Shown here one piece after another: positions 49,288-59,427 of a DNA stretch of 64,000 bases; positions within the stretch are counted from its first letter, which is position 1; each line of letters begins with the position of its first letter. Below the pieces are notes generated by a model. It saw only the letters and a program-made list of their open reading frames with translations, did no database searches and was not told the origin of the DNA. The stretch covers positions 124,001 through 188,000 of the IMG/VR virus record IMGVR_UViG_3300015261_000002. The stretch is one strand, 5' to 3'. The position numbers and the translations under genes are program-made.

Positions 49288-49320
49288 TTTTAATTACCTT
49301 CATTAATGGGAGCCAGAGAA

Positions 49321-50397
49321 ATGGCGGATGATCCTAATCTGTATAGCGGGTGGTACGACAAGACCCCAGGGAATGAAGAACCCAAAGGCGATCTGACCAG
49401 TCAGACGTTTGACGACTGGCTTGAATACGCGTTTCGAGAAAACGGCGGACCGGGTTACTCGAGCGCACTGATCAGCATGCTGAAAGGGGTACGAATTCTA
49501 GGCCCTGGGAACCAGTTGGCTCCCATCCCCGACGACACCATAGGATTAGTCTTTATTAACCGGCCGTTGTTGAACTTATCCGACGAAAACGTTGTAAAAC
49601 ATCCTCAAATGTTGCCGCTTTACAACCCAACTCGAAATACCCTGCAACATTACGTGAAGGGGTTACTCGATCCGGTGTGGGGAAGAGCGAACAGTGGTAA
49701 CAGCGAAATGCTCGATCCGTTGTATCCCTGGATGGGTTGTTTGACAAACCTGTGCAAGGTGTCCTCGGGCTTTCCTGACGTCAACATGCCTGTCGAGAAA
49801 TCGACCCCCGGTATTCGTAAAGAAGTCTATCAGTACCCCAACGGGATCCTGAAGGTGAACTACGACTACGACATGCGACTCACCTTTCACAACCCCAAGC
49901 CTAACGTGGTGCCGTTTATCTTCGACGTGATCAACCACTACATCGAAGGGGTGACGTTGGGTGACGAAGGTATGGAACCCTACCCGGAAGCGCTGATCCA
50001 GAACTACCGCGATTATGATGTGCGCATCTATCACATCATCATGAACAAGAACATGCGCAGTATTGAAGGGATCTACTGCAACGGCTACTCCTGGCCTAAC
50101 ACTTATCCGTCGGGTGCTTTCAGTACCATCGACCGTACGCAGAACAGTTTGCGTGGCCAGGGGCAGGATGAAGTAGAGATCAACTTCCCGAGTGTTATCT
50201 TCCGCTATAACAATTTGCGTCTTGCGGACATGTTTAACCGCACGACGCTGTTCTTCAATCCAAACATGAACCCTCGTGTTCGCGAGAACAACTATCGCAA
50301 GTTGAAATTCAGTGAGTACTACGCGGCTAACTATGCGTTGTGCTATCCATGGATTAACGTGAACTCGATGGAAATGGAATACTGGGGTGCTAAGTAA
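49321..50397 (+). CDS. Virion structural protein (phiKZ gp88-like; tube/baseplate)
   Basis: Start ATG 49321 (SD GGGAG), 358 aa; FINRPLLNLS and SGFPD motifs; precedes the large baseplate gene. Confidence 0.6.
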   Translation: MADDPNLYSGWYDKTPGNEEPKGDLTSQTFDDWLEYAFRENGGPGYSSALISMLKGVRILGPGNQLAPIPDDTIGLVFINRPLLNLSDENVVKHPQMLPLYNPTRNTLQHYVKGLLDPVWGRANSGNSEMLDPLYPWMGCLTNLCKVSSGFPDVNMPVEKSTPGIRKEVYQYPNGILKVNYDYDMRLTFHNPKPNVVPFIFDVINHYIEGVTLGDEGMEPYPEALIQNYRDYDVRIYHIIMNKNMRSIEGIYCNGYSWPNTYPSGAFSTIDRTQNSLRGQGQDEVEINFPSVIFRYNNLRLADMFNRTTLFFNPNMNPRVRENNYRKLKFSEYYAANYALCYPWINVNSMEMEYWGAK

Positions 50398-53328
50398 ATG
50401 GCCGACATTACACAACGAGAACTGATCGCACTGGCCAACAACCCTATTCGTGGGGTCAACCGTGTGATCAACCAGATCGAAGAGAACTACTTCGGTCGAT
50501 CGGTAAAACTGAACAGCAAGAGCCACCCGTTTGTCTTTGGTACCGACATCATCCTCGGAACCGCCCACGGTATCTTGAACCGTGTTGACGATGCGGTGGC
50601 TAAACTGTTCCCCGCTCATGCACGCAGTACTGCTGATCTCAGCCGGCACATGTCGGAAGAAGAGCAGGTCGGGATGTTTGGTACCCCGGCGATCATGGAC
50701 CTGCAATACGCGATCAACACCGACGTCTACATGTCGTTGGCAAAAGACGTAACGATCACCCTCGGCAAAAGTACCTTCACGTACAAAATGCTGTTGCTGC
50801 CGAAGGACACCGAACTGACCTTTGGTGGTTACACCTTTGCGATCGAGAACGGTATTGAAATCCGTTACAGCGAGCAGACGGGCTACCAGGTCGTCTACGA
50901 TGACAGCACGAACAATCCGCTGAACCCGATCTCGAACAACCTCCTGAAGCGAGTGGTGACCCCTAACGGTTACCTGACGATCGTTATCCCGTGCCGTCAG
51001 TTGATGTGCCAGCCTACCGAGAATCTGACGTCGAACATCAGCTCGGGTTGTGCCGGTGATATCGACTTCATTGACTATCTGTTTGCCGTTCGTGCATTCC
51101 AGACGGTCAATGGCATCAAGACGGAAATCCCGGTTACCTACAACCAGGATGTCTTCGACCCTAACACGGTCACCATGGCATTGAGCCTGGATGTCAGCAA
51201 CCAGCGGTTCAATTACCGTATCCCGGATGTCTACATTGCCAACGGCCTGGGCATCGGTTCGATCGACATCTATACCTACACGACGAAGGGTGAACTGTCG
51301 AAAGACTTTACCCAGACTGCGTTGCCGGATGTTGGGGTTAACTACCAGGACTATCGTTTTGGTGCAGGTACCCTCGGTCCGTTCTCTAACGCACTGAAGT
51401 CGTCAGGCGGTATGGCATGGCGGGCAATGACGCCGACGTCGGGTGGTAGCAATGCCATTCCTTTTGCTCAGATGAAGGCTTCCTTTATCATGGGTCGTCG
51501 TCAGCGCAATCTGCCGATCACCGAAAACAACCTGGTGGGTACCGTGGAGAACTACGGCTACAACTCGGTTAAGGCGATCGACTACATGACGAAGCGTAGC
51601 TACTCGTTGACCAAGGAACTTCGGATCCAGGACAACAAGAAGCTGTTTGCTCCCATGGGTTGCTTTGTTGGCAGTTACCTGGCATCGGTTAACAGTCTCA
51701 TTGGTAGCGGTGTGGTGATCGACAATGGTCAGCGTATTACCATCCCGCACAACGTGCTGTTTGATATCAGCCAGCCAACTACGGTCCTGATCAACCAGGT
51801 CACGAAGAACAACTACGAAGCCAGAAGCAACGAAGCCAAGGTAGACCTGGTAGCGTCGACGACTCTCGTCTATACACCGTTCTACTACGTTATGGACCTG
51901 ACGAACAACCAGGCTGTGTTGCGTACCTACCACCTCGACCAACCTAAGTTCCAAAGCCAGACGTTTAAGGCTGAGAACAGCTTGCTGGGTATCGACGTGG
52001 GTGTGGGCTCTGTGGCCATCGAGCAGAATGACTCGGGTTACCTGATCACGATTGTGACGGCATCGGGTAAGAGCTATAAGGAACTGGACGACTCCACGTT
52101 GGGCCTCCAGCTCTCTGTACAGCCTGAAGACACAAACAGCCTGGCCAGTATTGCAGCCACCCTGTACGGCCTCACAGAAGACGGTGAACGTATCTGGCAG
52201 TTCGCACTCGACAGTCGTTTCGATGTTGATGTGAATGACGTGATGTACTTCACAAACTTCGTGCAGTTCGGTAACACCCAACCGACCACCGGCGTTCCAC
52301 TGGATCTGACGATGACGTTTATCTTCACCTTCCAAGGCGATAAGGCTAACACAGCGACCGACTCGGATGACAAGATTGACCAAAGTCTGTTCCCAGTGCC
52401 GATGGTGGCTATCATCGAAACTCAGTACAGTGTTGTGTTGGGCAAGAAGATGGGTAACCTGTACAGCCGTATCCGTCCTCTCGTAGGCGAAGCGCAGTAC
52501 AAGAAGTATGGCGTCGACGTTCCGCTTGTGTATCAGGAAACGATCTACAAGCGTGACGAGAATAAAGAGATCATCTTTATCGATGGTGTTGCTCAAGTTG
52601 AGCACGAAGTGGGTGAGGTCATGTACGACAAGAACGTACCGCCTCGCATCATGCTGGAATACACCAAAGACGACTACATGCTTGATGGTGAAGGCAACTA
52701 CATCGAAGTGGCTCCTCGTGAGAAACTCTATCACTGGGACTTCATCGGTTTCGACGGTGCGTACTTCTTCAGTCATGATGCCTATGACATGCAGTTTGCC
52801 CAAGAGACCAAGGACTACTTCGTTGATGTCATCAGTCAGGACATGGCTTACTTTGCATCGTCCTCGCTTGATCAGACTAGCCTGGTCTACCAACCGCGCA
52901 ACAAGCTGGGCTACCAGAAGGTGGTCGTCAACAGCAACTACACCTCGTACCTCCGTCAGGATCTGAGCTTTGTGGTCACCTACTACCTCACGTCAGCGGG
53001 TATGAAGAACCAGAGCCTGAAGAGTTCCCTGGAAGCCAGTACTCCACGGACACTCAACGAAGGGTTGTTTGGAGCGACAACCTTCAGTGCCAACGACTTG
53101 GCGTTCCAATTGAAGGACGGTACCTCCCGAGAAGTGGTTGCGGTTAAACTGAGTGCCATCGCAGGTGACAGTACTGTGGATGTCATCAGTAACGCTGACT
53201 CCCTGACGGGCTTCAGTGTTCGTAAACTGTTGCAGGTGAGTTCGGACGGCTTGCTGTCGATCAAGGAAGACATCGACATCGTGTTCTTGCCGCATGACGT
53301 TTCCATGGTCAACATGGGTCCGGTGTAA
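50398..53328 (+). CDS. Large baseplate wedge-like protein (phiKZ gp87-like)
   Basis: 976 aa, beta-rich; size and plus-strand position inside the head-gene block match gp87. Confidence 0.7.
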   Translation: MADITQRELIALANNPIRGVNRVINQIEENYFGRSVKLNSKSHPFVFGTDIILGTAHGILNRVDDAVAKLFPAHARSTADLSRHMSEEEQVGMFGTPAIMDLQYAINTDVYMSLAKDVTITLGKSTFTYKMLLLPKDTELTFGGYTFAIENGIEIRYSEQTGYQVVYDDSTNNPLNPISNNLLKRVVTPNGYLTIVIPCRQLMCQPTENLTSNISSGCAGDIDFIDYLFAVRAFQTVNGIKTEIPVTYNQDVFDPNTVTMALSLDVSNQRFNYRIPDVYIANGLGIGSIDIYTYTTKGELSKDFTQTALPDVGVNYQDYRFGAGTLGPFSNALKSSGGMAWRAMTPTSGGSNAIPFAQMKASFIMGRRQRNLPITENNLVGTVENYGYNSVKAIDYMTKRSYSLTKELRIQDNKKLFAPMGCFVGSYLASVNSLIGSGVVIDNGQRITIPHNVLFDISQPTTVLINQVTKNNYEARSNEAKVDLVASTTLVYTPFYYVMDLTNNQAVLRTYHLDQPKFQSQTFKAENSLLGIDVGVGSVAIEQNDSGYLITIVTASGKSYKELDDSTLGLQLSVQPEDTNSLASIAATLYGLTEDGERIWQFALDSRFDVDVNDVMYFTNFVQFGNTQPTTGVPLDLTMTFIFTFQGDKANTATDSDDKIDQSLFPVPMVAIIETQYSVVLGKKMGNLYSRIRPLVGEAQYKKYGVDVPLVYQETIYKRDENKEIIFIDGVAQVEHEVGEVMYDKNVPPRIMLEYTKDDYMLDGEGNYIEVAPREKLYHWDFIGFDGAYFFSHDAYDMQFAQETKDYFVDVISQDMAYFASSSLDQTSLVYQPRNKLGYQKVVVNSNYTSYLRQDLSFVVTYYLTSAGMKNQSLKSSLEASTPRTLNEGLFGATTFSANDLAFQLKDGTSREVVAVKLSAIAGDSTVDVISNADSLTGFSVRKLLQVSSDGLLSIKEDIDIVFLPHDVSMVNMGPV

Positions 53329-53329
53329 A

Positions 53330-53388
53330 GCAGCTATAAACCATGCCTACCCTACCTCCCGCAAAGGAGGTAGGGTAGGTTATGGCCG
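53330..53388. terminator. Bidirectional terminator
   Basis: 14-bp stem CCTACCCTACCTCC / GGAGGTAGGGTAGG flanked by GCAGCTATAA and TTATGGCCG. Confidence 0.85.
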
Positions 53389-53395
53389 GTACAAC

Positions 53396-54154
53396 TTATT
53401 CCGCAGGCTGTTCCATCGGAGTCCCTGGGTACTTCAGGTTCAGGTATTCCGCAAACATGAACGGCAGCTTCAACTTGTTGCACATGTCGCTCGTGCGCCA
53501 AGAGAAGTCCTTCAGACTGTAACCCGTCAACTTCAGGTCAGGCTTGAAGGTACCTTCCAGATAGCTGGAGTGCGCCTTAGCCATGATGTCCTTGAACTCG
53601 TTAACAAAGAGGTAGTCCCCGTTGATGACGATATCCGGAACACGGTTGAGTTGATCCCACGAGGTGAGCGAACCGTCTTTCAACTTCTGCTCAGCTTCGT
53701 AGAAGTAGTCGCCGGTGTACGCGGTGTATTTCAACACCTCGCAACGGAACTCGTTCAGACGTTCCTGGCTCTCCACCGTGAAGTCAGCTGCGAGCAGCTC
53801 TTTCATTGTGGTGTTGACGACCTGGTCGATGTAGGCGTAAATGACCTCGAAGTACTCGCGGGTTTCTTTCAGCTCGCCCAGTTGCTTGCGTGCTTCTTCA
53901 ACGGGCAGGCCTGCATACAGCACAACAGACTTGTTCGTTTCAGGAAAGCATTCGGACAACTGAACAATCAGCGAGTTAGCCCGAGAGCTACTACCCCAGA
54001 TACCGCGGATGATCTTTGTAGCGACCGGCAGTGGAAGACCTTCGTCTTCCATCGCGGTGATCAGGGATTCGAGTTCGTCGATGTACGTCTGAGTCGTGAC
54101 ATCAGCCACACCCTTCAGTTTGACGATCTCTTCCCACATGGCTGCTCGGCTCAT
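53396..54154 (-). CDS. Head-associated hypothetical protein
   Basis: 252 aa, ATGA-coupled to 54151..55665. Confidence 0.6.
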   Translation of the reverse strand: MSRAAMWEEIVKLKGVADVTTQTYIDELESLITAMEDEGLPLPVATKIIRGIWGSSSRANSLIVQLSECFPETNKSVVLYAGLPVEEARKQLGELKETREYFEVIYAYIDQVVNTTMKELLAADFTVESQERLNEFRCEVLKYTAYTGDYFYEAEQKLKDGSLTSWDQLNRVPDIVINGDYLFVNEFKDIMAKAHSSYLEGTFKPDLKLTGYSLKDFSWRTSDMCNKLKLPFMFAEYLNLKYPGTPMEQPAE

Positions 54155-55665
54155 AGCAATTTACCTGCTCCGATTTGCTTGGTGAAGTTGTTGAGGTTGG
54201 TCTTAACCCCACCAATATCACTTTGGATGGCGAAGTTCACGTTGGCGGTCAACTTCTCGCCAAACGTTTTTGCATCGGCATCCTTGATGAACACACGACC
54301 TTCGATGATCGGGCTCAGACCGCGAGAGCGTGCCTCAGCAACGATCTTCTCGACCGCCTCGATATCGCCGACCACACCACTGTAGTAGTAGGCATGGATG
54401 CGACCGTACCATTCAACCAGGCTGACGATCTGCCGTTCAACGCGGAGAACTTCCTTGTTGATGGAGTAGCACATCTGGCTGAAGTTACGGCAAGCGACGC
54501 TCAACATCTGGTAGTCGGATAGCAGTTGCGGTGCGTTGTAGTAGGTCGCCATCGCGCTGATCTTTTCAGAGTCAGACTTGTCGATGATCTCGCCTAGTGC
54601 TTTCCAGTTGACTTTCGAGATATCAACCTCGTCGTCCACCAGTTCCTGGTAACGCACGTTCAGACGCTGGATCTCGAGCAGGGTAGCGGACACATCCACA
54701 CCGGCTACAGTCGAAGCACTTGCCACAACTTCGGTCTTCAGGCGGTTCTGTACCTGGTCAAACTTGTTGGCCAGTTCTTCGTTCGAGAAGTCAAGGCTAT
54801 ACAGATCCTTGTACAGTTTGCTCATGAGACCAGAGATCTCTTCAACGCCAAAGGTCAGCAGCGTTTCGTTCATTGCCTTGGTGATAACAATCACTTCGGT
54901 AGACGATTCACCGGCGACGTGGTTACCCGACTTGTGACGCACACGAGAACGGTTGTACTCGTCGAGGATCACTTTCTTCAGACGCTTCTGAGCGATCGTA
55001 ACCTTGTCAGTGGCCTGCTTGATCTTCACGTTCAGCTGCTGGATCAACGGAACACTGGCCGCCAGCTTCTTCACTTGATCGATATCGCTATCGAGCTTGT
55101 TCTTCAGCAGGTGGATCTGTGCAACACGATCCTTGTCCTTTGGCAGGCTGCCGAGGAACTTCTCGACGTTGTACTCAGCGACGTTGAAGCCAAAGCTGAT
55201 CAGCGTGTCTTCGAACTCTTTCTTCAGATCGCCGAGGCTGTCATTGATGGCTTTGGTGATCCGTTCCGACTTGCGGAAACCGAAGATCCCTTTAACCATG
55301 TCGACAACCCAGTCGATGGCCATGCGGATGTAACGAATGATGGTTTCGATGAAGTCTTTGAAACCGGTGTAGACCGCACTGAAGAAGCCTTCAGCGCCCA
55401 TGCGAGCGTTGCGCTCCGAAGGGAACGGGTCATAGTTCTCGACGCCTTTGAGTTTGAGGTGGCGGGCAACCTGCTTGGAGAAACGACCGAGGCTCAGTTG
55501 TTCGGAACCCATCACCATAACGGTGGCGTTGTTCTGTTCACTGACCTGGTAGTATTCAGTCAGGTCGATACGTTGTTTGTTTTCGCCAGGCTGATACGAA
55601 TCAACCGGCTCCGCATTACCGTACTGCTGGTAATCGTCAATCTTGGTAGTGGCGGAGTCACTCAC
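54151..55665 (-). CDS. Head/ejection protein, processed family
   Basis: 504 aa; RMGAE|GFFSAVYTGFKDFIETIIRYIRMAIDWV, followed by coiled coils. Confidence 0.7.
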   Translation of the reverse strand: MSDSATTKIDDYQQYGNAEPVDSYQPGENKQRIDLTEYYQVSEQNNATVMVMGSEQLSLGRFSKQVARHLKLKGVENYDPFPSERNARMGAEGFFSAVYTGFKDFIETIIRYIRMAIDWVVDMVKGIFGFRKSERITKAINDSLGDLKKEFEDTLISFGFNVAEYNVEKFLGSLPKDKDRVAQIHLLKNKLDSDIDQVKKLAASVPLIQQLNVKIKQATDKVTIAQKRLKKVILDEYNRSRVRHKSGNHVAGESSTEVIVITKAMNETLLTFGVEEISGLMSKLYKDLYSLDFSNEELANKFDQVQNRLKTEVVASASTVAGVDVSATLLEIQRLNVRYQELVDDEVDISKVNWKALGEIIDKSDSEKISAMATYYNAPQLLSDYQMLSVACRNFSQMCYSINKEVLRVERQIVSLVEWYGRIHAYYYSGVVGDIEAVEKIVAEARSRGLSPIIEGRVFIKDADAKTFGEKLTANVNFAIQSDIGGVKTNLNNFTKQIGAGKLL

Positions 55666-56053
55666 GGCCGGCCTCCAGTTCTTTTACCAGGTAGTCGGTC
55701 AGAACGGAGCAGGCCGGCAGCTCGCCAACGTCCACGTCATTCACGATGGTGGTGAACTCTTTCTTGCACGGCAGGGTGCCGGTGTTCATCATCACACCGT
55801 TCAGCATGCCGATGCGCACTTGAGCGGTCTTGTGGATCAGCGGGGCTGGGATAGGGGATACCTTGTTCCACTTGTCGAGCATGGCCCAGGCTTTCTCATC
55901 CATCTCGGTGGTCCAACCGCCCAGACGGTACGAACGACGGATCAGGGCACGGGCGAACGGTTCGGCCAGCAGCTTGCTCTGCTCGATGGGACAGGTGATA
56001 CCTTTTTCGGTCAGGGCTTTCTTGAATTCAACAACATGGATCAAATGCGACAT
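55658..56053 (-). CDS. Small conserved hypothetical protein
   Basis: 131 aa, overlap-coupled in the operon. Confidence 0.6.
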   Translation of the reverse strand: MSHLIHVVEFKKALTEKGITCPIEQSKLLAEPFARALIRRSYRLGGWTTEMDEKAWAMLDKWNKVSPIPAPLIHKTAQVRIGMLNGVMMNTGTLPCKKEFTTIVNDVDVGELPACSVLTDYLVKELEAGRE

Positions 56054-56080
56054 GGTAGAGTTCCTTGCAAGGGGAGAGGG

Positions 56081-57484
56081 TTAGAATTCGTACGTCTTGT
56101 TTTCTTCTGGACTCTTGTCCGTTCCGTCACGACGCGCTTTCAGGTTGGCCAGTTTTACAGCAATGGTGTTCACCTCGTGGTTGGCGACCACAGAAGTGTA
56201 ATGTTCAACTTCTTGGGCTTTAAAGTCAGACTGACTGAACACCCAACCCATGAAGCGGTGGATCACGGTACTCTCATACCAAGGACGCAGGTCTTTCGCA
56301 TGGTTCAGCAGTTGCTGCACTTCATCTGCCAGGGCATTCTTTTCAGAGGCCGGCATCTTCGTGTCCTCTTTCAGCTTTTGGATCAGCTGACGGACAGCAT
56401 CTTCAAACCGACGGTGGTCAGCGTTATAGACGCCCGAGTAACCTTTGCTGAAGTAGTTCAGAACAAAGATAAACATATAGAAGACCATGGCCATGAACAA
56501 AGCACCGGCGACGCCGATAGAGATCGTTACCGAGAGCCAGGCAGGCAATGCAATGATCGTGGTCACTGCGGCAATCATCAGGCTGTTGACAACCGTTTGG
56601 ATGCAACCCTGGTCAGTCAGGATGCCGATCGCTGCGATAATGCCCTTGTCACAGCCCATGCGGATGGCGTACATGTCAGCCACAACTTCGGACGACATCG
56701 ACTCAACCCCTACCGACAAACTGCGTCGCATATTACGTTGGGCGATTAATTTATCGAAGTAGAGGAAGACAGTCTTGTCATCCTGTTCTTGGGCGAGCAT
56801 TTGCAGCTCACCTTGTTTGGCCGCTGGAACATCCAGCAGAGAAGCAACATCCTTGAGCACTACAACGCGATCTGAGACGTCTTTAGCCTCGCGATAGTAG
56901 AGCAGGGCGCTCTTCAGGTAGAGGTTGTCAGACGCGACTGTGAGCAGCATCATGCAACCGCTGAACACATGACCGAGTTCGTGGGCGATCGCACCTGCCA
57001 GGATACCCGGCAACGGTACGCCAAACTTCTTCACCTTATCGGCTGGGAAGGTAGCGTTCAGGTCAGGGTTGATCTGGAAGGTCACGGGTACGGTTTGGAA
57101 GGAACCGAGGACCTTACCACTGGTGTAATCGATGCCACCTTTAAACACCTTGTCCTTGTTCTGGGTAAACCAGCGGTACAGGGTGGTTTGAGTTGGCTTC
57201 AGCAGGTCGTCTACCAGTGCGTTGTTCAGCACATGGTTGGGGGAGAAGTAACCGGCGTCAACAGACAGGTTTCCGCTCTTGGAGAACTTCATGTCCACGT
57301 TCTTGAAACCCGTGAACTCCTCGATGAGGTCTTTGATGCCTGGGATGGCTTCTTTACTCAGAACACCGTCGGGACCAATCTGACTTTCGAGGTACAGCGA
57401 CAGCTTGCGGTAGAAGTCAGTGGACTGGAAGTTAATGAACTCCAACCCTCCGACGGGTCGTTTCAAAAAATCCATCGAGATCAT
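56081..57484 (-). CDS. Membrane-anchored HExxH zinc metallopeptidase-like protein in the head operon
   Basis: 467 aa. GAIAHELGH plus downstream SEVVADMYA (gluzincin/M48-like E-x-x-A-D), then a hydrophobic stretch of about 50 aa. Confidence 0.65.
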   Translation of the reverse strand: MISMDFLKRPVGGLEFINFQSTDFYRKLSLYLESQIGPDGVLSKEAIPGIKDLIEEFTGFKNVDMKFSKSGNLSVDAGYFSPNHVLNNALVDDLLKPTQTTLYRWFTQNKDKVFKGGIDYTSGKVLGSFQTVPVTFQINPDLNATFPADKVKKFGVPLPGILAGAIAHELGHVFSGCMMLLTVASDNLYLKSALLYYREAKDVSDRVVVLKDVASLLDVPAAKQGELQMLAQEQDDKTVFLYFDKLIAQRNMRRSLSVGVESMSSEVVADMYAIRMGCDKGIIAAIGILTDQGCIQTVVNSLMIAAVTTIIALPAWLSVTISIGVAGALFMAMVFYMFIFVLNYFSKGYSGVYNADHRRFEDAVRQLIQKLKEDTKMPASEKNALADEVQQLLNHAKDLRPWYESTVIHRFMGWVFSQSDFKAQEVEHYTSVVANHEVNTIAVKLANLKARRDGTDKSPEENKTYEF

Positions 57485-57567
57485 GCACCTGTACTCCTCA
57501 AAGATATTTATTACTGGGACGCCATTGGTATAGCGCTAAAAGCGGGCATAAAATGCAGGATAAACCC

Positions 57568-59427
57568 ATGACACAAAATCTTTCACCAATTATCGCGAAA
57601 GTCTGCAAACATGCTCATTATTCAGAGCATCGCTGGGACAAAACCAAAGACCTCCTCACAGCGAAGATCACGAACATCCATGAGGACGGTACTCGGTCGA
57701 CAACCTTTAAGTCCTACGAGAATTACAAGCAGCCGTTCTGGATCATTAAGGAACAGCATCGCAAGTTCAACCAACCAAAGGACTACATCGAAGAACGGTA
57801 CGTCAGGGAATACCGTTGCAATCGTCGTCAGATTCCATTTGAAGTCAAGAAGCAGTTGTTTGGGGCAGCTGATCGCAGTGCTTCGATTTATGACATCAAG
57901 TCGGGCAAAGGTATTCAATACGTGTTTGGTCTTGACCAGACGCCTGCGGTGCATTTGAAGCAACAGTTCTTTAAACGGTATGCGGAATACCAGGAAAAAG
58001 AAAAGTACACCATTGCGGCATTCGACGTTGAAGCCGACATGGAAGCGATTGGTGAAGTGAAACCGATCATGATGGCTTCGGTCACTATGAAGGACAAAGC
58101 TTACTTCGCCGGGTGCCGGGGTTGGTATCAGTCTCGGCAGGACAAGATTGACCCGAAGGTTCGTTTAACTGACTTTGCGATTTTAGCGGAGTTAAAAGCG
58201 GCCGAGAAGAAGTACCTGCAAGAACACTTGGATCGTCGAGGTTGCACGATTGAGTATGAGTTGTTCGATACACCGGGTCAGGTAGCCTTTGCTTGTATTC
58301 AGAAGTTCCACGAGTGGGAACCAGACTGGGTACTGAGCTGGAACGCCGCTTACGATATGGAAGCGTGTGAGCGTGCATTGCGGTCCGAGGGTTATAACCT
58401 GGCCGACGTGTATTGCGATCCTCGTGTTCCAAAAGAGTATCGGATGTATGAACTTAACCTGGGTCGTACACACAAGGTTAAAGAGAACGGCGACCGTACT
58501 CCTCTCGAACCTCAAGAGAAGTTCCCAACCGTTCGTTGTGTAGCAACATGGCAGTGGGCTGATGCCATGTCGGGTTATGCCATCAAGCGATTCTCTTCGG
58601 GTAAGCTCGAGAGTTACTCGCTGGAGGCGACTGCGCAACGGGAGAAGGTCAAGGGTAAGCTGTACACCGAAGAAGGCGCTGATAAGCTCCCAGGGTCTCC
58701 TCAGTGGCATCGATACATGCAGAAGCATTATCCGTATCTGTATTCGATGTACAACATTGGCGATAACTTCCCAATCGAAGAGATCAACGAAACCACGCTG
58801 GACTTTGTACTGTCGATTCCAATGCTGCTGCGTTATTCGGAGTATTTCAACTTCGTTTCGCAACCACGTTTGATTGCAGATACCTTGTCCTTTATTGCGC
58901 GTGAGCATGGTTACGTTTGGGGCAGCACTCCTGCTAAACGGGATAAAGTCTTTACTGACCGACTGCCGACTCTCGACAACTGGATTGCACTTCTCGATAC
59001 TGAGAAGAACGCAGACATGGGTCGGGCAATCTTTATCGGTCTGGATGACGTTATCAGTGCGGGTCGTGGTCTTACTGACGACCTTGACGTTGAAGGGGCG
59101 TACCCAACCGGTACACTGGCTTCTAACGCAGCGAACAAAACCACGCAGATGGAGGTGTATGCCATTCAGGGTGCTAATGACATGAAGTTCCGGGAGATTG
59201 CCGTGAACTATGCCAGCAGTACTCAAGCGAATGCCATGGGTCTGAGTCACGCACTGTTCCGTTTCCCACAAGCCGACAAACTGCAATCTGAGTTTGAGAA
59301 AGGTTTGGAAGAACTGGGTTATGCAGACATGTTGAAGCAACTGCGTGAAAGTGCAGAGAAAGCAAAAGCAGAACGAGAAGCACGTCAAGCCAAAGTCCTA
59401 CCAGAAGTACTGAAAGAAGCGGCGTAA
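57568..59427 (+). CDS. Split family-B DNA polymerase, exonuclease plus motif-A subunit (phiKZ gp82-like)
   Basis: Start ATG 57568 (SD AGGA), 619 aa. ExoI AAFDVEAD, ExoII SWNAAYD, ExoIII MYNIGD and motif-A-like DLDVEGAYPT; no motif B or C. Confidence 0.88.
   Translation: MTQNLSPIIAKVCKHAHYSEHRWDKTKDLLTAKITNIHEDGTRSTTFKSYENYKQPFWIIKEQHRKFNQPKDYIEERYVREYRCNRRQIPFEVKKQLFGAADRSASIYDIKSGKGIQYVFGLDQTPAVHLKQQFFKRYAEYQEKEKYTIAAFDVEADMEAIGEVKPIMMASVTMKDKAYFAGCRGWYQSRQDKIDPKVRLTDFAILAELKAAEKKYLQEHLDRRGCTIEYELFDTPGQVAFACIQKFHEWEPDWVLSWNAAYDMEACERALRSEGYNLADVYCDPRVPKEYRMYELNLGRTHKVKENGDRTPLEPQEKFPTVRCVATWQWADAMSGYAIKRFSSGKLESYSLEATAQREKVKGKLYTEEGADKLPGSPQWHRYMQKHYPYLYSMYNIGDNFPIEEINETTLDFVLSIPMLLRYSEYFNFVSQPRLIADTLSFIAREHGYVWGSTPAKRDKVFTDRLPTLDNWIALLDTEKNADMGRAIFIGLDDVISAGRGLTDDLDVEGAYPTGTLASNAANKTTQMEVYAIQGANDMKFREIAVNYASSTQANAMGLSHALFRFPQADKLQSEFEKGLEELGYADMLKQLRESAEKAKAEREARQAKVLPEVLKEAA

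What the first reader, a model, noticed from the sequence alone, without database searches (positions are those of the whole stretch)
56081..57484. Membrane-anchored zinc metalloprotease-like protein leading a head/ejection operon
It has an intact HELGH, a downstream EVVAD third-ligand motif and two probable TM helices, an M48-like arrangement. It lacks an obvious G-x-E propeptide yet is co-transcribed with a processed head protein. Inference: a second, membrane-acting protease that is ejected or made late, to process phage or host membrane proteins during entry or vesicle formation. Homologues probably exist in other phiKZ-like phages, but I know of no demonstrated activity.
Basis: partly seen in the sequence, partly recalled or inferred. 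Interest (0 to 1): 0.6.

Follow-up and report, generated by a model that had tools for sequence, protein, structure and literature searches.

The report
Phage head M48-like zinc metalloprotease
This jumbo-phage gene is the local copy of a conserved virion-head protein (the phiKZ gp84 / SPN3US gp45 family) with an intact M48-type zinc-protease site, a short cleavable targeting peptide and a hydrophobic hairpin; the family and its protease-like look are already published, but its activity and target have never been tested.

Summary
The ORF is real at 56081-57484, but it lies on the minus strand (467 aa).

**Confirmed**
- HELGH (aa 168-172), EVVAD (aa 266-270) and a 55-residue hydrophobic hairpin (aa 293-347) are all present.
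- In 140 relatives as low as 15% identity, H168, E169, G171, H172 and E266 are invariant.
- The N-domain model (pLDDT 90) ranks ZMPSTE24, Ste24p, BepA and three minigluzincins first among 48,161 PDB chains.
- Twenty of 104 distant members hit Pfam Peptidase_M48.

**Wrong**
G13-L14-E15 is conserved (P1 is E in 138/140; P3 is G, S or A in 130).
- It aligns with the mapped prohead-protease site ASE-20 of SPN3US gp45.

**Identity**
- The protein is the orthologue of phiKZ gp84, SPN3US gp45 and EL gp52. This is Chimalliviridae core gene cg22, a head protein.
- Iyer et al. 2021 already called it an uncharacterised zincin-like metallopeptidase; their example, AMR59696.1, is 100% identical to gp45.

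**Best reading**
- It is a head-packaged, N-terminally processed, probably active M48-like protease.
- Ejection and action at a membrane remain inference.

It is a new member of a known, functionally untested family.

The parts
56081..57484 (-). Gene for the 467-aa protein (P0001), orthologue of phiKZ gp84 / SPN3US gp45 / EL gp52
   Evidence: ORF list and translation. PHROG phrog_2767, E 1.2e-82. EL gp52 at 47.5% identity with the same gene order. phiKZ gp84 found by profile plus synteny. SPN3US gp45 at E 2.3e-46.
57440..57484 (-). Predicted 15-residue N-terminal propeptide ending in G13-L14-E15, a prohead-protease site that resembles a capsid-targeting sequence
   Evidence: P1 is E in 138/140 members and P3 is G/S/A in 130. 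It aligns with the SPN3US gp45 ASE-20 site (PMC10052503). Residues 1-19 have pLDDT below 50. The genome encodes a gp175-like prohead protease.
56600..57427 (-). Zincin catalytic domain (aa 20-295): five-stranded sheet, active-site helix, helical insert, glutamate helix
   Evidence: AF2 domain model with pLDDT 89.9. VIA-align top rows are ZMPSTE24 Z 8.2, Ste24p 8.0, BepA 7.0, proabylysin 6.8, selecase 6.5 and projannalysin 6.2.
56969..56983 (-). HELGH: two zinc-ligand histidines and the catalytic glutamate (aa 168-172)
   Evidence: H, E, G and H are invariant in 140 diverse members.
56675..56689 (-). EVVAD: E-x-x-A-D glutamate-helix motif carrying the predicted third zinc ligand E266 (aa 266-270)
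   Evidence: E266 is invariant, D270 is kept in 139/140 and A269 in 127/140. E. coli HtpX, BepA, YcaL and LoiP carry the same E-x-x-A-D motif.
56444..56608 (-). Hydrophobic helical hairpin (aa 293-347), a probable two-helix membrane anchor that continues directly from the glutamate helix
   Evidence: Kyte-Doolittle 19-residue means reach 2.4. The model has helices 265-311, 313-322 and 325-349. The stretch is present in all 140 members, but its sequence is not conserved and its length varies (5th-95th percentile 27-60 residues).
56129..56437 (-). C-terminal helical domain (aa 350-452) opening with near-invariant Y353 and R359
   Evidence: Model helices 356-373, 379-399, 407-417, 420-434 and 438-452. 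Y353 is kept in 135/140 and R359 in 139/140.
55658..56053 (-). Second gene of the block (131 aa), counterpart of phiKZ gp85 / EL gp53
   Evidence: phrog_14520 'virion structural protein', E 9e-23. Same position in EL, OBP, phiKZ and SPN3US.
54151..55665 (-). Third gene (504 aa), counterpart by position of phiKZ gp86 / EL gp54 / SPN3US gp47; G-x-E motifs at aa 53, 74 and 90
   Evidence: phrog_14541 'virion structural protein', E 6e-107. Motifs found. SPN3US gp47 is a processed, essential candidate ejection protein (PMC5694885).
53396..54154 (-). Fourth gene (252 aa), in the position of EL gp55; function unknown
   Evidence: Start overlaps the previous gene by 4 nt. No PHROG hit. Gene order as in EL, OBP and AH04.
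53346..53379 (.). 15-bp GC-rich hairpin in the gap between the convergent gene blocks; a candidate end of the transcription unit
   Evidence: Terminator-like scan; sequence read.
57485..57552 (.). 68-bp divergent intergenic region shared with the DNA polymerase gene (57553-59427, + strand); presumed promoter region
   Evidence: The same divergent arrangement is seen in EL, OBP, AH04 and SPN3US.

Best explanation
The gene encodes this phage's orthologue of phiKZ gp84 / SPN3US gp45, a core protein of phiKZ-like (Chimalliviridae) jumbo phages.

It is made with a short N-terminal targeting peptide. It is incorporated into the prohead, and the phage's own prohead protease trims it after G13-L14-E15.

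The mature protein is a divergent M48-type gluzincin. H168, H172 and E266 would hold a zinc ion, and E169 would activate water. The glutamate helix runs straight into a hydrophobic helical hairpin that returns to a C-terminal helical domain.

Most likely it is a catalytically active, low-copy head-internal protease. It would leave the capsid with the DNA and insert its hairpin into a host-derived membrane (the inner membrane or the early-infection vesicle), where it would cut a host or co-injected phage protein.

Shown here: the anatomy, the conservation, the fold class, the orthology and the presence of the processing site.
Shown by others in orthologues: head location and N-terminal cleavage.
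Inferred: catalytic activity, ejection, membrane insertion and the substrate.
For: Motifs and hairpin are present.

Conservation:
- H168, E169, G171, H172 and E266 are invariant in 140 members at 15-44% identity.
- The family is large: 1861 clusters at 50% identity, nearly all 415-470 aa.

Fold and family:
- The domain model has pLDDT 89.9.
- The top nine of 48,161 PDB chains are all zinc peptidases, and the top six are M48 or minigluzincins.
- 20 of 104 distant members hit PF01435. P0262 (25.2 bits) and P0273 (21.4 bits) exceed the 20.3-bit cut-off across both motif helices.
- The ESM Atlas points the same way.

Orthology and synteny with EL gp52, OBP_100, phiKZ gp84 and SPN3US gp45.

Head location and processing:
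- The phiKZ record notes 'structural head protein'.
- SPN3US gp45 is a head protein cleaved at ASE-20 by gp245 (PMC10052503 Table 2; PMC5694885).
- That site aligns with E15, and the S/A/G-x-E pattern is conserved.
- The genome has a gp175-like protease.

Importance:
- It is core gene cg22 (PMC10299810 supplement).
- PHIKZ084 has no transposon insertions after trimming (PMC12676376 Table S2).

A membrane role is suggested by the universal hydrophobic stretch. The SPN3US counterpart of a neighbouring gene, gp47, is a candidate ejection protein with a transmembrane helix (PMC5694885).
Against: No protease activity, zinc binding, ejection or membrane association has been shown for any member.

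This protein itself has no Pfam hit. Foldseek gave no match at E <= 0.001. The VIA-align Z scores (6-8) lie in the range the tool calls 'middling', and the two best rows have rmsd of about 9 A.

hhalign against four E. coli M48 paralogues aligned only the HExxH helix, at probability 49%.

I could not read model coordinates, so the geometry of the metal site was not measured.

The hydrophobic stretch ranges from about 27 to 60 residues, and phiKZ gp84 has only about 28. A two-span hairpin is therefore not certain for every member.

gp84 is not named among the injected or early-vesicle proteins in the Mozumdar preprint.

The TnSeq zero may be a locus effect, since orf85-86 also have zero insertions yet tolerate deletion.
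Confidence: 0.55

Rival explanations
1. It is a second maturation protease that works inside the prohead. It would cut head or inner-body proteins during assembly and is not meant to leave the capsid. This is the suggestion of Iyer et al. 2021.
For: It is head-located and has a targeting-type propeptide (PMC5694885, PMC10052503). phiKZ-like heads undergo extensive proteolysis. Iyer et al. propose this role for AMR59696.1, which is identical to SPN3US gp45.
Against: All 14 cleavage sites mapped in SPN3US heads are attributed to gp245 and fit its A-x-E motif. Substrates stay uncut in gp245 mutants, and recombinant gp245 cuts gp53 in vitro (PMC10052503). No orphan cleavage therefore calls for a second enzyme. 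This reading also does not explain a hydrophobic hairpin conserved in every member.
Confidence: 0.2
2. It is a membrane tether or assembly factor. The hairpin would hold the nascent prohead, or its initiation complex, on the inner membrane, and the protease site would serve in release or quality control.
For: SPN3US proheads of protease mutants stay bound to the inner membrane (PMC10052503 introduction). The hairpin is universal. The protein is a core gene without transposon insertions.
Against: The mature, hairpin-bearing protein is found in purified DNA-filled heads and virions (PMC10052503 Table 2). It is therefore not left behind on the membrane. Removing 15-20 N-terminal residues cannot free a C-terminal-side anchor. 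There is no direct evidence.
Confidence: 0.12
3. It is a structural head protein that has kept a protease-like fold but no longer has catalysis (a pseudo-enzyme).
For: The databases call it only 'virion structural protein'. No activity has been reported.
Against: The four catalytic and ligand residues plus G171 are invariant across 140 members at 15-20% identity. D270, R275, G277 and R359 are at least 95% conserved. Dead enzymes usually drift at these positions.
Confidence: 0.06

Closest known systems
phiKZ gp84 / SPN3US gp45 / EL gp52 / OBP_100 family (Chimalliviridae core gene cg22; PHROG 2767; the 'zincin-like metallopeptidase' of Iyer et al. 2021)
   Same: Full-length homology, the same length class, and the same position beside a divergent DNA polymerase gene and upstream of the gp85- and gp86-type genes. 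It also shares the HExGH...ExxAD motifs, the hydrophobic stretch and the N-terminal S/A/G-x-E site.
   Different: Only 47.5% identical to the nearest cultured relative (EL) and about 15-20% to phiKZ gp84. Its hydrophobic stretch is among the longest (55 residues, against about 28 in phiKZ). It has a 20-residue charged C-terminal tail that most members lack.
Peptidase family M48 (Ste24/ZMPSTE24, HtpX, BepA, LoiP, YcaL; Pfam PF01435)
   Same: HExxH followed by a Glu in an E-x-x-A-D helix. The spacing is long: 93 residues here, against 78 in HtpX and 60 in BepA. It has the best structural matches, and distant family members pass Pfam's threshold.
   Different: This protein does not itself reach the Pfam threshold. 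The hydrophobic helices lie after the glutamate helix, not before or around the site as in HtpX, and they do not form a seven-helix chamber as in Ste24. It has a five-stranded N-terminal sheet region and a C-terminal helical domain of its own. It is packaged in a virus head.
Minigluzincins (proabylysin, projannalysin, selecase)
   Same: These minimal soluble scaffolds of the M48/M56 catalytic core align over about 100 residues at rmsd 3.4-4.0 A, Z 6.2-6.8.
   Different: They have about 105 residues and no membrane segment. The phage domain is about 275 residues, with a roughly 60-residue helical insert between the two motif helices.
T4 internal head proteins carrying a capsid-targeting sequence (IPI-III, Alt)
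   Same: A short N-terminal peptide is removed by the prohead protease after a Glu. The comparison with the T4 targeting sequence was made for SPN3US gp45 (PMC5694885). The idea of an enzyme stored in the head and delivered with the DNA comes from my own knowledge of T4.
   Different: There is no sequence relationship. None of the T4 proteins is a metalloprotease or carries a hydrophobic hairpin.

Membership tests
phiKZ gp84 / SPN3US gp45 family (Chimalliviridae core gene cg22) | Full-length sequence homology to named members | tested here: met
   tblastn finds EL gp52 at 47.5% identity over 96% of the query, E 2e-127. A family profile finds phiKZ gp84 (E 1.7e-5) and SPN3US gp45 (E 2.3e-46). 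hhalign of gp45 against the family gives probability 98.6%.
phiKZ gp84 / SPN3US gp45 family (Chimalliviridae core gene cg22) | Conserved gene order: first gene of a block with gp85- and gp86-type genes, next to the DNA polymerase gene (divergent in EL, OBP, AH04 and SPN3US), convergent with the gp87-type baseplate gene | tested here: met
   Window ORFs compared with EL, OBP, phiKZ, AH04 and SPN3US.
phiKZ gp84 / SPN3US gp45 family (Chimalliviridae core gene cg22) | Physical presence in the virion head | not testable with these tools
   Known only for orthologues: the phiKZ record note and SPN3US mass spectrometry (PMC10052503). The window comes from an uncultured IMG/VR record.
Substrates of the phiKZ-type prohead protease (gp175 / gp245) | S/A/G-x-E motif near the N-terminus, at the position cleaved in an orthologue | tested here: met
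   G13-L14-E15 aligns with ASE-20 of SPN3US gp45. P1 is E in 138/140 members and P3 is G/S/A in 130.
Substrates of the phiKZ-type prohead protease (gp175 / gp245) | The protease is encoded in the same genome | tested here: met
   A phiKZ gp175 homologue lies at G000:C1:25401-26036 (32% identity, E 1.9e-20).
Substrates of the phiKZ-type prohead protease (gp175 / gp245) | Observed cleavage of this protein | not testable with these tools
   This needs virion mass spectrometry.
Peptidase family M48 (Pfam PF01435) | HExxH zinc-binding and catalytic motif | tested here: met
   HELGH at aa 168-172, invariant in the family.
Peptidase family M48 (Pfam PF01435) | Third ligand Glu in an E-x-x-A-D helix some 60-95 residues downstream | tested here: met
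   EVVAD at aa 266-270. The same motif is seen in E. coli HtpX, BepA, YcaL and LoiP. The median family spacing is 91 residues.
Peptidase family M48 (Pfam PF01435) | Match to the Pfam model above its gathering score (20.3 bits) | tested here: not met
   There is no PF01435 hit for this protein, even at E <= 10, and none in its genome. The threshold is met only by distant relatives: 20 of 104 at E <= 0.01, with P0262 at 25.2 bits and P0273 at 21.4 bits.
Peptidase family M48 (Pfam PF01435) | Fold of the catalytic domain resembles solved M48 structures | tested here: inconclusive
   M48 and minigluzincin chains fill ranks 1-6 of 48,161 (Z 8.2-6.2). However, Z is moderate, rmsd is about 9 A for the two best rows, and Foldseek E values are above 0.1.
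Peptidase family M48 (Pfam PF01435) | Membrane topology of a known M48 subfamily (seven-helix chamber of Ste24, or N-terminal helices plus helices between the motifs as in HtpX) | tested here: not met
   The only hydrophobic segment is aa 293-347, after the glutamate helix. The HtpX layout is seen.
Peptidase family M48 (Pfam PF01435) | Zinc-dependent endopeptidase activity | not testable with these tools
   No biochemical data exist for any family member in the papers I searched.

The most novel reading that the evidence does not exclude
The protein would be a virion-delivered membrane protease. It would be stored in the head, injected with the genome, and anchored by its hairpin in the inner membrane at the entry site or in the early-infection vesicle. 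There its cleavage of a host membrane protein or a co-injected phage protein would be needed to build, maintain or open that vesicle. This would be the first phage-injected integral-membrane metalloprotease, and a handle on how nucleus-forming phages make their first compartment.
Probability: 0.25. Interest if true: 0.75.

Novelty: new member of a known kind. Interest (0 to 1): 0.4.

Why it matters
This is one of the roughly 70 genes shared by all nucleus-forming jumbo phages. It received no transposon insertions in phiKZ, and its catalytic residues are frozen across a very large, very diverged family. Yet nobody has tested what it cuts.

Combining three scattered published facts with the anatomy found here gives a concrete, testable picture. 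The published facts are its head location, its N-terminal trimming and the 'zincin-like' call. The anatomy adds M48-type motifs and fold and a universal hydrophobic hairpin.

If it is ejected and acts at a membrane, it bears on the open question of how the early-infection vesicle forms. If not, it is a second head protease whose substrates are unknown.

For annotation, it shows that labels such as 'SDR family oxidoreductase' on this family are wrong.

Tried and rejected
**Searches that gave nothing useful**
- Pfam on the protein itself: no meaningful hit.
- Pfam on 68 close relatives: only scattered weak hits.
- Pfam on EL, OBP, AH04, FLC9, pEa37 and phiKZ orthologues: nothing.
- PDB sequence searches with the protein and with two profiles: nothing relevant.
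- Megablast against phage genomes: no match.
- Foldseek against PDB with both models: no match at E <= 0.001.
- VIA-align with the full-length model: swamped by generic helical bundles matching aa 267-401. ZMPSTE24 was only rank 35, so the N-domain was folded alone.
- hhalign of the family N-domain against an alignment of four E. coli M48 paralogues: only the HExxH helix aligned, probability 49%. The profile was thin, so this does not support membership by itself.

**Literature**
- Searches for gp84, PHIKZ084 or orf84 found nothing in main texts. Only two supplementary tables mention it.
- The Thomas et al. 2012 phiKZ head-proteome paper is not held, so whether phiKZ gp84 itself was seen cleaved could not be checked.

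**Not possible or not used**
- Model coordinates are not exposed, so ligand distances could not be measured.
- The sigma-70 promoter scan is uninformative here. It found 2 hits against 2.5 expected, and these phages use their own polymerases.
- The reads tools, complex prediction and alternative genetic codes were not used, because no claim needed them.

**Rejected idea**
- The TnSeq zero for PHIKZ084 does not prove essentiality. The dispensable orf85-86 also have zero insertions.
Full report
**What is there.** The coordinates 56081-57484 bound a 467-codon ORF, but it reads on the minus strand. The ATG is at 57484 with GAGGAG nine bases upstream, and the stop is at 56081. The + strand translation of the same interval is full of stops. 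The protein (P0001) has these features:
- HELGH at aa 168-172
- EVVAD at aa 266-270
- a hydrophobic stretch at aa 293-347 with two Kyte-Doolittle peaks of 1.98 and 2.40.

The window is part of a complete 224.7-kb uncultured virus record with terminal repeats. Its closest cultured relative for this protein is Pseudomonas phage EL, at 47.5% identity.

**Surroundings.** The gene is the first of four tightly packed minus-strand genes, with gaps of 27, -8 and -4 nt:
- a 131-aa protein (phrog_14520, virion structural)
- a 504-aa protein (phrog_14541, virion structural)
- a 252-aa protein with no family hit.

A 15-bp GC-rich hairpin (53346-53379) sits in the gap before the convergent 976-aa gene. That gene is the counterpart of phiKZ gp87, a baseplate wedge protein (PMC13250141). 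Upstream, 68 bp away and divergent, is the DNA polymerase gene. This layout recurs in EL (gp51-55), OBP (099-103), AH04 (100-104) and SPN3US (gp44-47). phiKZ keeps the gp84-86 block and the convergent gp87, but there the polymerase gene (gp82) is co-oriented and gp83 lies between. 'Leading an operon of virion proteins' is therefore a fair description.

**Identity.**
- PHROG 2767 (function unknown) matches at E 1e-82.
- A family profile finds phiKZ gp84 (E 1.7e-5, plus synteny and a full-length alignment) and SPN3US gp45 (E 2.3e-46).
- The phiKZ record notes gp84 as a 'structural head protein'.
- Prichard et al. list phiKZ gp084 as core gene cg22 of the nucleus-forming phages, 'putative virion structural protein' (PMC10299810 supplement).
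- An exhaustive profile search found 1861 clusters at 50% identity (1441 at E <= 1e-10), nearly all 415-470 aa.

**The protease site is under strong selection.** In 140 representatives at 15-44% identity to the window protein, H168, E169, G171, H172 and E266 are invariant. D270 is kept in 139/140, R359 in 139, G277 in 139, G127 in 139, Y353 in 135, R275 in 133 and A269 in 127. A chance HExxH would not behave this way, and neither would a dead enzyme.

**Fold and family.** The full-length AF2 model has pLDDT 79.8 and pTM 0.77. Its structure search was dominated by generic helical bundles.

The N-domain alone (aa 18-298) gave pLDDT 89.9. Against 48,161 PDB representatives its nine best matches are all zinc peptidases:

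| Chain | Z | Aligned residues / rmsd |
|---|---|---|
| ZMPSTE24 | 8.2 | 161 / 9.2 A |
| Ste24p | 8.0 | |
| BepA | 7.0 | 109 / 3.2 A |
| proabylysin | 6.8 | |
| selecase | 6.5 | |
| projannalysin | 6.2 | |
| SPRTN | 5.8 | |
| DPP III | 5.6 | |
| BlaR1 | 5.3 | |

The individual scores are moderate, and Foldseek is not significant. The coherence of the list is the evidence.

Sequence gives an independent link:
- Of 104 distant members scanned against Pfam, 20 hit Peptidase_M48 at E <= 0.01. No other family was hit by more than one member.
- Two of ten members re-examined exceed Pfam's gathering score, with matches covering both motif helices.
- The E-x-x-A-D form of the third-ligand motif is the one seen in E. 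coli HtpX, BepA, YcaL and LoiP.
- The ESM Atlas gives the same pointer.

The window protein itself has no Pfam hit, and a thin E. coli profile aligned only the HExxH helix. I therefore call it M48-like: a divergent branch attached to M48 through its relatives. It is not a member by Pfam's own criterion. Its topology also differs from known M48 enzymes, because the only hydrophobic segment follows the glutamate helix.

Residues 1-19 are disordered in the model and contain G13-L14-E15.
- Across 140 members, P1 is E in 138 and P3 is G (58), S (47) or A (25).
- The median distance from the start is 12.5 residues.
- This is the S/A/G-x-E pattern of the phiKZ-type prohead protease.
- In SPN3US, gp45 is a head protein of 'unknown function' and a substrate of prohead protease gp245, cut at ASE-20. 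Its 20-residue propeptide was compared to the T4 capsid-targeting sequence (PMC5694885; PMC10052503 Table 2).
- SPN3US E20 falls in the same alignment column as E15.
- The window's genome encodes a gp175-like protease.

The protein is thus itself predicted to be a processed head protein.

**Prior art.** Iyer et al. [quoted passage not shown] AMR59696.1 is SEGD1_047. It is 100% identical to SPN3US gp45 and matches this family at 98.6% probability. One phage record already labels its orthologue 'peptidase' (AH04). The SPN3US papers do not mention a metalloprotease or zinc. I found no report of activity.

**Function.** The phiKZ TnSeq tables show zero insertions in PHIKZ084 after trimming (1242 bp, against a genome-wide average of one per 42 bp). 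However, orf85-86 also show zero and yet tolerate deletion, so the locus may be intolerant for other reasons.

The hydrophobic stretch is present in every member, unconserved in sequence, and typically about 42 residues (5th-95th percentile 27-60). This fits a two-helix membrane hairpin that puts both soluble domains on the same side. The short forms, such as phiKZ gp84 at about 28 residues, leave room for a re-entrant or single-span arrangement.

SPN3US gp47, which occupies the position of the third gene, is an essential, processed candidate ejection protein with a transmembrane helix (PMC5694885). All mapped head cleavages in SPN3US are accounted for by gp245. That weakens the 'second maturation protease' idea.

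My best reading is a head-stored, ejected, membrane-inserting protease. The ejection and membrane steps are inference. gp84 is not among the injected or early-vesicle proteins named in the Mozumdar preprint.

**A structural lead, not a result.** With the full-length model, the weak ZMPSTE24 alignment runs from model residue 42 to 364 and chain residue 229 to 470. Arg465 of ZMPSTE24 lies at its catalytic site (bioRxiv 10.1101/2020.08.17.254532). The near-invariant R359, just after the hairpin returns, may be its counterpart. This needs coordinates to check.

**Verdict.** The gene is a new member of a known, conserved, functionally untested family.

Noticed in passing
window 53346-53379: A perfect 15-bp GC-rich inverted repeat (9 G-C pairs, 4-nt loop) sits exactly in the 67-bp gap between the convergent gene blocks. 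It lacks a clear T run, so it may be a bidirectional, factor-independent stop for the phage polymerases or an RNA-stability element.
   Followed up: partly
window 50398-53328 (+) and 49306-50397 (+): These are counterparts of phiKZ gp87 (a baseplate wedge protein in the 2026 phiKZ structural atlas) and gp88. The 'head/ejection' block is therefore convergent with baseplate genes, as in phiKZ, EL and SPN3US.
   Followed up: partly
P0077 (WP_142126521.1) and Aeromonas phage ZPAH34 hit H34: Public records name EL-like members of this family 'SDR family oxidoreductase'. Nothing in Pfam or in the fold supports that, so it looks like a propagated misannotation.
   Followed up: partly
Cluster of phiKZ gp84 (P0112-P0122): Ten short fragments at least 90% identical to phiKZ gp84 are deposited as 'Klebsiella pneumoniae' proteins on contigs of 230-680 bp. 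This is most likely phiKZ DNA carried over into those assemblies.
   Followed up: no
P0235 (839 aa), P0221 (628 aa), P0225 (575 aa): A few family members are much longer. In P0235 the family match covers residues 412-837, so about 410 unrelated residues precede it. This could be a fusion or a mis-called start.
   Followed up: no
window 53294-54385 (+), 55643-56749 (+), 56969-57571 (+): Long ORFs (200-368 aa) lie antisense to the virion-protein genes. The one tested (53294-54385) has no PHROG hit. They are probably shadow ORFs rather than genes.
   Followed up: partly
G000:C1:25401-26036 (-), outside the window: This is a homologue of the phiKZ head maturation protease gp175 (32% identity, E 1.9e-20). 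It is the enzyme expected to trim this protein and the 504-aa neighbour, which has G-x-E motifs at aa 53, 74 and 90.
   Followed up: partly
phiKZ orf84-88 in TnSeq Table S2 of PMC12676376: Five consecutive genes (084-088) have zero insertions after trimming, although orf85-86 can be deleted. The whole convergent locus seems intolerant of the transposon, perhaps through read-through into the essential baseplate genes.
   Followed up: no
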